From NCBI RefSeq assembly GCF_001194135.2, contig NC_068985.1:113728444-113792443 (forward strand): a DNA stretch of 64,000 bases, given 5' to 3'. Shown here piece after piece: positions 19,520 through 21,020 of the stretch. Position 1 is the stretch's first letter. Each line of letters begins with the position of its first letter. The position numbers were made by a program, and so were the translations under genes. The notes under the pieces were generated by a model. That model saw only the letters and a program-made list of their open reading frames with translations, did no database searches and was not told the DNA's origin. Source of the DNA: Octopus bimaculoides. Lineage: Eukaryota.

Positions 19520-19655
19520 GTGGTTAGGGCAGCAGACTCGCGGTCAGTGGATTGCGGTTTCGATTCCCAGAGTGGGCGTTGTGAGTGTTTATTGAGCGCA
19601 AACACCTAAGCTGCACAAGGCTCCGGCAGGGGGTGGTAGCGACCCCTGTTGTACA
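19520..19655 (+). mobile_element. SINE family D, 5' part only
   Basis: Colinear with ~4170-4300. Confidence 0.8.
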
Positions 19656-19661
19656 AAAAAG

Positions 19662-20117
19662 AAGGCGGCTCGCCGCTGGCAGAAACGTTAGCACGCCAGG
19701 TGAAATGCTTAGCGGTATTTCACCTGGCATGCTAACGTTTCTGCCAGCTCGCCGCTTTCTTTTTTATACAACAGGGGTCGCTACAAGGTTTTTTTTTTCT
19801 CCTTTACTTTTTCTTTTTTTTCCCCTACCCCTTTGACTAAGCAGGCATACAGCCTCCTAACACACACACACACACACACACGTGCTCTGTATCTCTCAGG
19901 TCTTCACTGTTGTCTACCCCGAAGGGTATCAATCAAAATCATCTGTTTTCGCTCAATAAACACTCGTCTGCTGCTACGTTCTGAGTTCAAATTGCCTTTC
20001 ATCCTTTCGGGGTTGATAAATTAAGTACCATTTACGCACTGGGGTCAATATCATCGACTTAATCCGTTTGTCTGTCCTTGTTTGTCCCCTTTGTGTGCAG
20101 CCCCTTGTGGGTAGTAA
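19662..20117 (+). mobile_element. SINE family B nested in a family D SINE and split by a 244-bp templated insertion (19722-19965)
   Basis: Head ends ...gcggtatttc at 19721 and resumes gtctgctgctacgttctgag at 19966, with no loss relative to the intact copy at 40948-41177. Confidence 0.85.
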
Positions 20118-21020
20118 AGAAATAACACATGAATAGGCCTTTGTATTTGTCCTCCACTACCACTTGGCAACTGGTGTTGGTTTGTCTATGTTCCTGTAGC
20201 TTAGTGATTTGGTAAAAGAGACCAACTGAATTGTGATGCAATGGTGGTGGGGGGAATGACAAAAGACACATGTATGCGAATGTGTGTGTGTTCCAGATGG
20301 TGGCATGGAGTTATAGCAGAAGTCACTCAAGATGCTATGCTGTGGGATTGAATTTGAAACCACATGGCTGCAAAACCAGCTTCTTAACTACACAACCATT
20401 CCTGTGTCTATGGTGAAAAAGTTCTCAAAGACTAGTGATGGTGAAGGGGTTGGAGAGAATGGAAAAGTAGTGAGTGATGTTGACTTTGATGGTAAATTGG
20501 CTAGAAATATTACAGATGAGAGGTGAGGGTGGAAGTGGTGGTGAAGGGGTTAATGACAAAACCATGGGTAATGTGGAGTAAATGGAGGTGAATGGGTGGA
20601 TGAGTGGGTATGTGTAGTGTTACTGAGTAAAGGAAGTGGCTGCAGTAGGGTAGCAGGGTAGAAAGGAGTGAGAAGAAAATACCTTAAACTGCACAAATCG
20701 ACCCCTTCTTGGAAAATGGAAGGAGAAAAAAGAAAGAAAGAAAGAAAGGAAAGGGAAGAGGGAGGCGAGGAGGTAGAAGGGAAGAAACTACAGTAACAAG
20801 AACAACAACAAGATGAAGAAGAGCAATATTAAGTTGAAGATGATGATGATGATATATTAGATGATTTTGATTGATACCCTTCGGGGTAGACAACAGTGAA
20901 GACCTGAGAGATACAGAGCACGTGTGTGTGTGTGTGTGTGTGTTAGGAGGCTGTATGCCTGCTTAGTCAAAGGGGTAGGGGAAAAAAAAGAAAAAGTAAA
21001 GGAGAAAAAAAAAACCTTGT
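19783..21020. repeat. Perfect 162-bp inverted repeat pair (19783-19944 and 20859-21020)
   Basis: Base-by-base reverse complements, including the T10 run and (CA)10. Confidence 0.92.

What the first reader, a model, noticed from the sequence alone, without database searches (positions are those of the whole stretch)
19583..21020. Multi-jump templated insertion inside a SINE builds a hairpin and a perfect 162-bp inverted repeat
Seen in sequence: a family B SINE is split exactly at ...gcggtatttc|gtctg... by 244 bp (19722-19965) made of three pieces, each the reverse complement of nearby DNA. Piece 1 (19722-19784) copies 19636-19701, a fold-back primed from the SINE's own gaaat/atttc mini-hairpin. 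Piece 2 (19783-19944) copies 20859-21020, ~1 kb away, 162/162 identical. Piece 3 (19945-19965) copies 19583-19603. Junctions show 1-2-bp microhomologies (ac, t, tc) and no loss of SINE sequence. The SINE head also has a micro-inversion (gcggcgagc to gctcgccgc, 19668-19676). Established knowledge: such patchworks are the signature of iterative template switching (Pol-theta end joining, FoSTeS/MMBIR). Inference: the plexin pre-mRNA gains a 162-bp perfect duplex plus a ~70-bp hairpin ~1.5 kb after an exon, a prime ADAR substrate in a lineage with extensive neural editing. Oddity: the short pieces differ from their templates at 4 sites while the long piece has none, suggesting error-prone synthesis or later gene conversion.
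Basis: partly seen in the sequence, partly recalled or inferred. Interest (0 to 1): 0.75.

Follow-up and report, generated by a model that had tools for sequence, protein, structure and literature searches.

The report
Patchwork inverted insertion inside an intronic SINE
A 244-bp insert made of three reverse-complement copies of nearby DNA splits a SINE in a plexin-A intron, creating a hairpin and a perfect 162-bp inverted repeat; it is a clear but ordinary scar of DNA template switching, with no function shown.

Summary
A SINE is split exactly at ...gcggtatttc|gtctg... by 244 bp (19722-19965). The insert consists of three reverse-complement copies: of 19636-19706, of 20859-21020 (162/162 identical) and of 19583-19604. 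The junction overlaps are 5, 2, 1 and 2 nt. This is the only near-perfect long inverted repeat in the 64-kb window.

The gene context is confirmed. Two minus-strand plexin-A exons (33185-33077 and 22639-22535) splice in frame, and the structure begins 1.5 kb into the next intron.

- Comparison with other SINE copies shows that differences lie on both the copies and their templates. The 9-nt micro-inversion is in the template and arose after the copying. Sloppy synthesis alone therefore cannot explain the differences.
- The short pieces carry 5 changes in 93 bp and the long piece 0 in 162 bp (p = 0.006). I favour two rounds: an older continuous 124-nt snap-back, then a younger replacement of 31 bp by the 162-bp copy.

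The size and the 0.9-kb template distance do not fit typical Pol-theta insertions. ADAR editing is plausible but untested. Read support, population data and orthologues could not be checked. This is a known kind of mutation and of moderate interest.

The parts
19520..19654 (+). Fragment of an unrelated repeat ('family A') upstream of the SINE. It supplies template A and the outer part of the left hairpin arm.
   Evidence: 83.8% identical to window 4171-4306 over 136 nt. The alignment runs uninterrupted through 19604/19605, so A and C were never adjacent.
19583..19604 (+). Template A, the source of piece 3.
   Evidence: Inverted repeat I7, 21/22. At the one differing site (19599) the paralogue at 4171-4306 agrees with piece 3, so the template probably changed after the copying.
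19636..19706 (+). Left hairpin arm (template B). It consists of 27 nt of flank plus the SINE head.
   Evidence: Inverted repeats I2 and I3; pairwise alignment. The template crosses the SINE 5' boundary, so the copying happened after the SINE inserted.
19663..19721 (+). SINE 'family B' head, ending ...gcggtatttc.
   Evidence: 93.6% identical to 41169-41123 and 2981-2935. The SINE start was fixed from the 16-bp target-site duplication of the copy at 41169-40945.
19668..19676 (+). 9-nt micro-inversion (gcggcgagc to gctcgccgc, net +3 nt) in the left arm. It is absent from piece 1 and from all other family copies.
   Evidence: Chance 0.0017 for an explained segment of at least 9 nt.
19702..19721 (+). 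The SINE's own mini-hairpin: gaaat (19702-19706), a 10-nt loop, then atttc (19717-19721). It is the priming stem for the snap-back, or the 5-nt homology for the final join.
   Evidence: Sequence. The motif is conserved in the family alignment.
19722..19784 (+). Piece 1: newly made right hairpin arm, the reverse complement of 19636-19701.
   Evidence: It carries 3 private transitions and keeps the ancestral gcggcgagc.
19783..19944 (+). Piece 2: the reverse complement of 20859-21020, 162/162 identical.
   Evidence: It includes (AC)11, T8 and T10 runs of the same length as in the source.
19944..19965 (+). Piece 3: the reverse complement of 19583-19604, 21/22 identical.
19966..20125 (+). SINE 'family B' body, resuming at gtctgctg...
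   Evidence: 79-80% identical to 41124-40945 and 2936-2760.
20859..21020 (+). Source C of piece 2. Apart from its (GT)n run it is unique in the window. Imperfect complementarity continues to 21025.
22535..22639 (-). Plexin-A exon (start of the IPT2 region), flanked by ...ttggcag| and |gtaagt. The structure begins 1,510 nt downstream of it in the transcript.
   Evidence: Sequence. Spliced to the PSI2 exon it aligns to Plexin-A1 residues 631-697, E = 3.9e-7.
33077..33185 (-). Plexin-A exon encoding the PSI2 domain, flanked by tttcag| and |gtaagt.
   Evidence: Pfam PF24479 PSI_PlexinA-B, 8.6e-10. PDB 6fkm PlexA residues 651-691. Sequence.

Best explanation
This is a real germline DNA rearrangement made by template switching during break repair or replication, most likely in two rounds.

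Round 1 (older). A 3' end at ...gcggtatttc folded back on the SINE's own 5-bp gaaat/atttc stem. It copied its own strand continuously from 19701 back to 19583, about 119 nt of new synthesis, and then rejoined the SINE at gtctg through a 'tc' overlap. The result was a hairpin with arms of about 124 nt.

Round 2 (recent). The new right arm broke, and 31 bp (the reverse complement of 19605-19635) were replaced by a 162-nt inverted copy of 20859-21020. The joins used 'ac' and 't' microhomologies.

Point mutations and a local 9-nt template-switch inversion accumulated in the old hairpin arms. The young 162-bp pair is still identical.

Shown: the anatomy, the junctions, the direction of the changes, the difference in divergence and the intronic position.
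Inferred: the order and number of events, and the enzymes involved.

As a consequence, the minus-strand plexin-A pre-mRNA can form a 162-167-bp perfect duplex closing a 914-nt loop, directly next to a roughly 70-bp hairpin.
For: - Exact anatomy and microhomologies.
- The SINE is intact across the join.
- Pieces 1 and 3 copy the same strand in the same direction with only a 31-nt skip (19636 then 19604), as expected if they were once one tract.
- 5 mutational events in 93 aligned bp of pieces 1 and 3, against 0 in 162 bp of piece 2: Fisher p = 0.006. At the rate seen in the short pieces, 8.7 changes would be expected in piece 2.
- Piece 2 contains slippage-prone (GT)11, A8 and A10 runs that are still the same length in both arms.
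- Differences are found on both template and copy. The micro-inversion is absent from piece 1 and from 6 other family copies. Site 19599 differs from both piece 3 and the paralogue. Time has therefore passed since pieces 1 and 3 were made.
- The private substitutions in pieces 1 and 3 argue against a library or assembly chimera for those parts.
- The priming geometry (5-nt inverted primer repeat, 10-nt loop, directly at the break) matches snap-back synthesis as described in PMC5728401 and PMC4912351.
- Single template switches are already known to create perfect hairpins (PMC5453318, PMC8794818).
Against: - No intermediate allele (a hairpin without piece 2) has been seen.
- The case for heterogeneity rests on only 5 events. 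The SINE head is richer in CpG (6 in 71 nt against 2 in 162 nt), which could raise its mutation rate.
- Gene conversion between the long arms, or consensus collapse of two near-identical arms in a short-read assembly, would also give 0/162.
- One multi-jump event needs the same number of junctions (four).
- The ancestral state at three of the five sites rests on few, diverged paralogues.
- No reads, population data or orthologous sequences were available.
Confidence: 0.4

Rival explanations
1. One event. A single nascent strand made four switches: snap-back on 19701 to 19636, a jump to 21020 to 20859, a return to 19604 to 19583, and a rejoin at gtctg. This would be a FoSTeS/MMBIR-like or iterated end-joining process. 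The long arms stayed identical through gene conversion, chance or a lower local mutation rate.
For: - The same anatomy and microhomologies.
- All pieces come from within 1.3 kb and all are inverted.
- Polymerases are known to switch modes repeatedly within one repair event (PMC4912351).
- The CpG-rich SINE head may mutate faster.
Against: - The divergence contrast of 5/93 against 0/162, p = 0.006.
- The microsatellite and homopolymer runs in piece 2 are unchanged.
- Gene conversion would have to act on the 162-bp arms, which are 914 nt apart, but not on the hairpin arms, which are 10 nt apart.
- Sloppy synthesis cannot explain the changes on the template side.
Confidence: 0.33
2. Assembly or library artefact. 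Piece 2, or its perfect identity to the source, or the orientation of the 914-nt spacer, was produced by short-read assembly or gap closing and is not in the genome.
For: - The window has seven N gaps typical of a short-read scaffold.
- A perfect 162-bp inverted repeat is longer than usual k-mers and many reads, so its two arms collapse to one graph node. Near-identical arms could then receive one consensus.
- No read data could be examined.
Against: - Pieces 1 and 3 have private substitutions that an artefactual copy would not carry.
- The hairpin arms share no exact run longer than 19 nt, so they assemble unambiguously.
- The junctions of piece 2 share only 1-2 nt with their neighbours, so no shared k-mer could cause a mis-join.
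- The assembled orientation restores exact SINE continuity.
- The region lies in a 14.5-kb stretch with no gaps.
Confidence: 0.12
3. RNA-templated repair. A reverse transcriptase, for example from a LINE, extended the minus-strand 3' end on the right side of a break. It copied the minus-sense plexin pre-mRNA with template jumps (A, then C, then B). The join was closed through the 5-nt gaaat homology.
For: - Every piece is a plus-sense copy attached to the minus strand, which is exactly what a cDNA of the local pre-mRNA would give.
- All templates lie in one intron of one transcription unit.
- The last junction would then have the longest homology (5 nt).
Against: - There is no poly(A), no target-site duplication and no spliced sequence.
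- It requires plexin-A transcription in the germline.
- DNA snap-back explains two of the three pieces without any extra template.
- The private changes in piece 1 are not A-to-G in RNA sense, so there is no editing signature.
- It does not explain the age contrast.
Confidence: 0.07
4. The 244-bp unit, or the span 19583-19965, is a mobile foldback or MITE-like element, or a dispersed repeat.
For: The span 19583-19965 has 22-nt terminal inverted repeats.
Against: - There is no second copy of any part in the 64 kb apart from the local templates and the (GT)n run.
- The left 'terminal repeat' lies inside an older repeat that aligns through it.
- There is no target-site duplication (cgttgt|gagtg against cactc|gtctg).
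- Each piece has a local source.
Confidence: 0.03

Closest known systems
Template-switch mutations (four-point model; Loytynoja & Goldman 2017, PMC5453318; Monttinen & Loytynoja 2022, PMC8794818)
   Same: A reverse-complement copy of nearby sequence is written into the nascent strand. This creates perfect stems or small inversions in one step. The snap-back hairpin and the 9-nt micro-inversion both fit a single switch-and-return.
   Different: The published model explicitly leaves out long-range and successive switches. Reported events are mostly tens of bases. Here the insert is 244 bp, needs at least three template segments, and has one template about 0.9-1.3 kb away.
Snap-back synthesis in alternative end joining (SD-MMEJ, PMC5728401; Pol theta, PMC4912351)
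   Same: A short inverted primer repeat right at the break (5 nt, 10-nt loop) primes copying of the same strand. The junction microhomologies are 1-5 nt. Several synthesis modes can be strung together in one product.
   Different: The median insertion there is 7 bp, synthesis is non-processive, and the repeat motifs lie within 30 bp of the rejoining site. Here the tracts are 63-124 nt and 162 nt, one template is about 0.9 kb away, and no flanking sequence is deleted.
FoSTeS/MMBIR complex rearrangements (from established knowledge; named in PMC5453318)
   Same: Serial microhomology-primed template switches to nearby single-stranded DNA in either orientation, producing mosaic insertions and inverted duplications.
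   Different: These are usually described at kilobase to megabase scale in human disease loci. This case is at the sub-kilobase extreme and lies in a SINE in an invertebrate intron.
Inverted-repeat dsRNA substrates of ADAR hyper-editing (PMC9989829)
   Same: The structure meets that study's working criterion: a reverse-complement match of at least 50 nt and at least 80% identity within 2 kb. It lies inside a neural gene's transcription unit.
   Different: Known substrates usually arise from two independently inserted young repeats in opposite orientation, not from a templated patch. No RNA data were examined here.

Membership tests
Template-switch mutation (four-point model) | The new segment is the reverse complement of nearby sequence on the same chromosome. 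| tested here: met
   All three pieces and the 9-nt inversion.
Template-switch mutation (four-point model) | The whole change is explained by one switch-and-return (four points). | tested here: not met
   The templates are not contiguous (19636-19706, 20859-21020, 19583-19604). Ancestral A|C or C|B adjacency is excluded by the paralogue alignment. Pieces 1+3 alone, and the micro-inversion alone, do fit.
Template-switch mutation (four-point model) | The ancestral state is known from an outgroup. | tested here: inconclusive
   Only paralogous SINE copies in the window were available. No orthologous sequence could be obtained.
Pol theta / SD-MMEJ templated insertion | Short microhomologies at the junctions, and a primer repeat next to the break. 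| tested here: met
   Overlaps of 5, 2, 1 and 2 nt. The gaaat/atttc stem ends exactly at the break.
Pol theta / SD-MMEJ templated insertion | Short insertions (median about 7 bp) templated within about 30 bp of the break. | tested here: not met
   The insert is 244 bp. The template of piece 2 lies 893-1,054 bp beyond the break in the uninterrupted SINE. Criteria taken from PMC4912351 and PMC5728401.
Pol theta / SD-MMEJ templated insertion | Dependence on POLQ. | not testable with these tools
   Needs genetics.
FoSTeS/MMBIR | Two or more serial template switches joined by microhomology, with templates nearby in either orientation. | tested here: met
   Four junctions and three templates within 1.44 kb. 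This holds whether one or two events occurred.
FoSTeS/MMBIR | All switches occur in one replication-based event. | tested here: inconclusive
   The divergence contrast (p = 0.006) argues for two ages but does not prove it.
ADAR hyper-editing substrate | A long intramolecular duplex within one transcript. | tested here: met
   Arm-arm duplex of -315 kcal/mol. The full 1,461-nt fold keeps both helices. The structure lies in the intron after plexin-A exon 22639-22535.
ADAR hyper-editing substrate | Clustered A-to-G mismatches on both arms in RNA. | not testable with these tools
   No RNA-seq available.
Foldback / MITE transposon | Terminal inverted repeats, a target-site duplication, and multiple dispersed copies. 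| tested here: not met
   No other copy in the window and no target-site duplication. The left terminus lies inside an older repeat. A genome-wide search was not possible.
microRNA precursor | A match to a curated family at or above its gathering score. | tested here: not met
   Best hit mir-3926, 32 bits against a gathering score of 82. This only reflects the hairpin shape.

The most novel reading that the evidence does not exclude
The 5-bp mini-hairpin built into this very abundant SINE family may act as a recurrent fold-back primer. SINE copies would then be hotspots that repeatedly seed long hairpins and inverted repeats inside neural-gene introns, supplying a steady stream of new dsRNA for editing or small-RNA pathways. 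This locus would be one caught example, and its duplex might affect plexin-A pre-mRNA processing.
Probability: 0.06. Interest if true: 0.6.

Novelty: new member of a known kind. Interest (0 to 1): 0.33.

Why it matters
The SINE consensus gives the exact pre-event sequence, so every junction of this complex templated insertion can be read at base resolution. That makes it a good teaching case and a possible calibration case for tools that detect multi-step template switching.

It also shows that non-transposon mutations can create perfect long dsRNA in an intron in one or two steps.

If the two-round reading is right, it suggests that a new long palindrome is itself fragile and attracts a second rearrangement.

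It is still a single mutational scar. No function, conservation or recurrence has been shown, and the mechanism class is well described.

Tried and rejected
External support for the junctions:
- Exact look-up of 10 ORFs from the region, including two that span junctions, found none in the collection.
- A homology search with the 83-aa ORF spanning the first two junctions gave no hits.
- A search with the PSI-exon ORF gave no hits. The protein collection evidently does not cover this genome.
- A metagenome scan for the 19-mer across the first junction gave 21 hits. All have random-level flanks, and 19 of the 21 contigs are GC-rich (0.63-0.73), so they are chance matches.
- No cephalopod genome, reads or RNA-seq can be reached with these tools.

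RNA gene annotation:
- tRNA and Rfam scans of 19000-21500 found no tRNA and nothing above a gathering score.

Models considered and rejected:
- Simpler rearrangement models in which pieces 2+3, or 1+2, are one inverted copy of a contiguous ancestor. Rejected because the family-A paralogue aligns straight through 19604/19605.
- A MITE or foldback element. Rejected: no copies and no target-site duplication.
- An RNA-editing signature in the private changes of piece 1. Rejected: in RNA sense they are G-to-A, C-to-U and G-to-A, not A-to-G.

Exon check:
- On its own, the exon at 22.6 kb gave no plexin match. It was verified only after splicing it to the PSI2 exon.

Full report
**1. Observation**

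The region was read directly and scanned for repeats. Three inverted-repeat pairs match the finding.
- 19778-19944 against 20859-21025: 167 nt, 99% complementary, with a perfect 162/162 core at 19783-19944 against 20859-21020.
- 19636-19706 against 19717-19784: the hairpin, with a 10-nt loop.
- 19583-19604 against 19944-19965: 21/22.

A self-BLAST of the window and an alignment of family copies show that the SINE is intact. Its head is 19663-19721 and its body is 19966-20125. It is collinear with complete copies at 41169-40945 and 2981-2760, both on the minus strand. The join falls exactly at ...gcggtatttc|gtctg... and no base is missing. The 'tc' at 19964-19965 could belong to either side.

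The insert is therefore 244 bp (19722-19965). Among inverted repeats of at least 60 nt within 5 kb, this is the only one in the window above 84% complementarity. The others are diverged SINE pairs or simple sequence. Source C is unique in the window apart from its (GT)n run.

**2. Gene context**

A minus-strand ORF near 33.2 kb matches Pfam PSI_PlexinA-B (8.6e-10) and Drosophila PlexA residues 651-691.

Both this exon (33185-33077) and a second candidate (22639-22535) have a canonical ag| acceptor (tttcag| and ttggcag|) and a |gtaagt donor, and their reading phases are compatible. On its own the second exon gave no plexin match. Spliced to the first, the 72-aa peptide aligns across the exon junction to Plexin-A1 residues 631-697. 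The E-value improves from 4.9e-3 to 3.9e-7.

The structure therefore lies in the intron after this exon, beginning 1,510 nt downstream in the direction of transcription. About 1,200 residues of plexin-A remain to be encoded further on. The species could not be determined with the tools.

**3. RNA consequences**

Folded as minus-strand RNA, 19575-21035 keeps both helices in the minimum-free-energy and centroid structures (-613 kcal/mol). The hairpin alone folds at -121.6 kcal/mol, against -45 ± 4 for shuffles (z = -18). The two long arms alone pair at -315 kcal/mol.

The structure meets the working criterion for potential intramolecular dsRNA used in a 22-species editome study: at least 50 nt and at least 80% identity within 2 kb (PMC9989829). 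Whether it is edited cannot be tested here.

**4. Which side changed**

Family copies serve as outgroups.
- The reverse complement of piece 1 reads ...aaagcggcGAGctggcag..., the family consensus. The left arm, which is the template, reads ...aaggcggcTCGCCGctggcag....
- The template therefore changed after it was copied. The change is an inversion of gcggcgagc that keeps an extra gcg (net +3 nt). A random 6-mer replacement is explained this well by a local reverse-complement copy in 0.17% of trials. It is a small template-switch mutation in its own right. It could equally be a direct patch copied from the right arm, which carries gctcgccgc at 19745-19753.
- Piece 1 has three private transitions, one of them at a CpG.
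- At 19599 the paralogue at 4171-4306 agrees with piece 3, so the template probably changed there too.

Two of the five changes thus sit on the template side. Error-prone synthesis alone cannot account for that. Time has passed since pieces 1 and 3 were made.

**5. Age contrast**

There are 5 events in 93 aligned bp of pieces 1 and 3, and 0 in 162 bp of piece 2. Fisher's exact test gives p = 0.006. At the rate seen in the short pieces, 8.7 changes would be expected in piece 2. Piece 2 also contains (GT)11, A8 and A10 runs, which are prone to slippage, and they are the same length in both arms. The SINE head is richer in CpG (6 in 71 nt against 2 in 162 nt), which weakens the contrast but does not remove it.

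**6. Mechanism**

Adjacent pieces cannot come from a contiguous ancestor, because the family-A paralogue aligns straight through 19604/19605. Several template segments are therefore required. All of them are inverted copies joined at overlaps of 1-5 nt. This is the signature of template switching.

Pieces 1 and 3 copy the same strand in the same direction, and piece 3 starts just 31 nt beyond where piece 1 stopped. Together with the age contrast, this leads me to favour two rounds.
- Round 1: one continuous snap-back, primed by the SINE's gaaat/atttc stem, copied 19701 back to 19583. This produced a palindrome with arms of about 124 nt and a 10-nt loop.
- Round 2: a later break in the new arm was repaired by replacing 31 bp with a 162-nt inverted copy of 20859-21020.

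It is established knowledge that long palindromes with short spacers are fragile and tend to be rearranged into less symmetric forms. This was not tested here.

It would need gene conversion, chance or assembly consensus to keep the long arms identical.

The direction of synthesis cannot be decided.
- Starting from the left end, two of the three templates are the 3' tail itself.
- Starting from the right end, the final join would use the 5-nt homology.

Assigning the event to Pol theta is not justified. Reported insertions have a median of 7 bp (PMC4912351). The SD-MMEJ criteria require the repeat motifs to lie within 30 bp of the rejoining site (PMC5728401). The tracts here are 63-162 nt and one template is about 0.9 kb away, which looks more like replicative switching of the FoSTeS/MMBIR type.

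An RNA-templated route is formally compatible with the orientation of every piece. This would be a reverse transcriptase jumping along the minus-sense pre-mRNA. Nothing else supports it.

**7. Artefact question**

The window has N gaps typical of a short-read scaffold. The focal region lies in a gap-free 14.5-kb stretch.

Pieces 1 and 3 carry private substitutions, and the hairpin arms share no exact run longer than 19 nt. They are therefore not copy artefacts and they assemble unambiguously. Piece 2 has no such internal evidence. Its perfect identity, and the orientation of the spacer, are the features that short reads could get wrong. However, no k-mer is shared across its junctions that could cause a mis-join. 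I give an artefact about 12%.

**8. Comparison with what is known, and verdict**

Single template switches that create perfect hairpins, including new microRNA stems, are well documented (PMC5453318, PMC8794818). Serial switching is the accepted model for complex rearrangements. This locus is an unusually legible sub-kilobase example inside a SINE. It is a new member of a known kind.

Nothing shows function, recurrence or conservation. None of the six other family copies in the window has an insertion at the mini-hairpin. Attempts to reach independent sequence failed.

Interest is moderate to low. The most useful outcome is the sharp, testable prediction of an intermediate allele.

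Noticed in passing
window 47572-47650 and 47742-47820: A second local palindrome. The 79-nt arms are 92.4% complementary and are unique in the window. They flank about 90 nt of trinucleotide microsatellites that mirror each other (ATT/ATC/AGT on one side, then ACT/AAT on the other). It may be another fold-back duplication or a foldback-type element.
   Followed up: partly
window 22535-22639 (-) and 33077-33185 (-): Two plexin-A exons (PSI2 and the start of the following IPT region) with a canonical ag| acceptor and a |gtaagt donor at each exon. They are separated by a 10.4-kb intron rich in repeats.
   Followed up: yes
window 21898-22044 (+): A 48-aa ORF (…KYQKLVEQCRNHGWQVHCKAFEVGSWGF…). 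From memory only, it resembles a motif seen in invertebrate retroelement remnants. Pfam found nothing.
   Followed up: partly
window about 19990 (focal SINE body): Relative to the copies at 41169-40945 and 2981-2760, the focal SINE lacks 17 nt (ttccgccgaggtcgact). This deletion is separate from the 244-bp insert.
   Followed up: no
window 40929-40944 and 41170-41185: The intact SINE copy at 41169-40945 is flanked by a perfect 16-bp target-site duplication (agaagcttgcttccca). This fixes the family's exact 5' and 3' ends.
   Followed up: partly
window 1606-1666, 7308-7346, 14176-14253, 28790-29123, 30587-30596, 36468-36567, 43633-43642: Seven runs of N. The window comes from a gapped scaffold, which matters for how far perfect repeats in it can be trusted.
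   Followed up: partly
window 20969-21016: The template of piece 2 starts right at the end of a 48-nt polypurine tract and includes a (GT)11 run. Both are sequences that can form non-B DNA and could stall replication near the switch point. This is speculation and was not tested.
   Followed up: no
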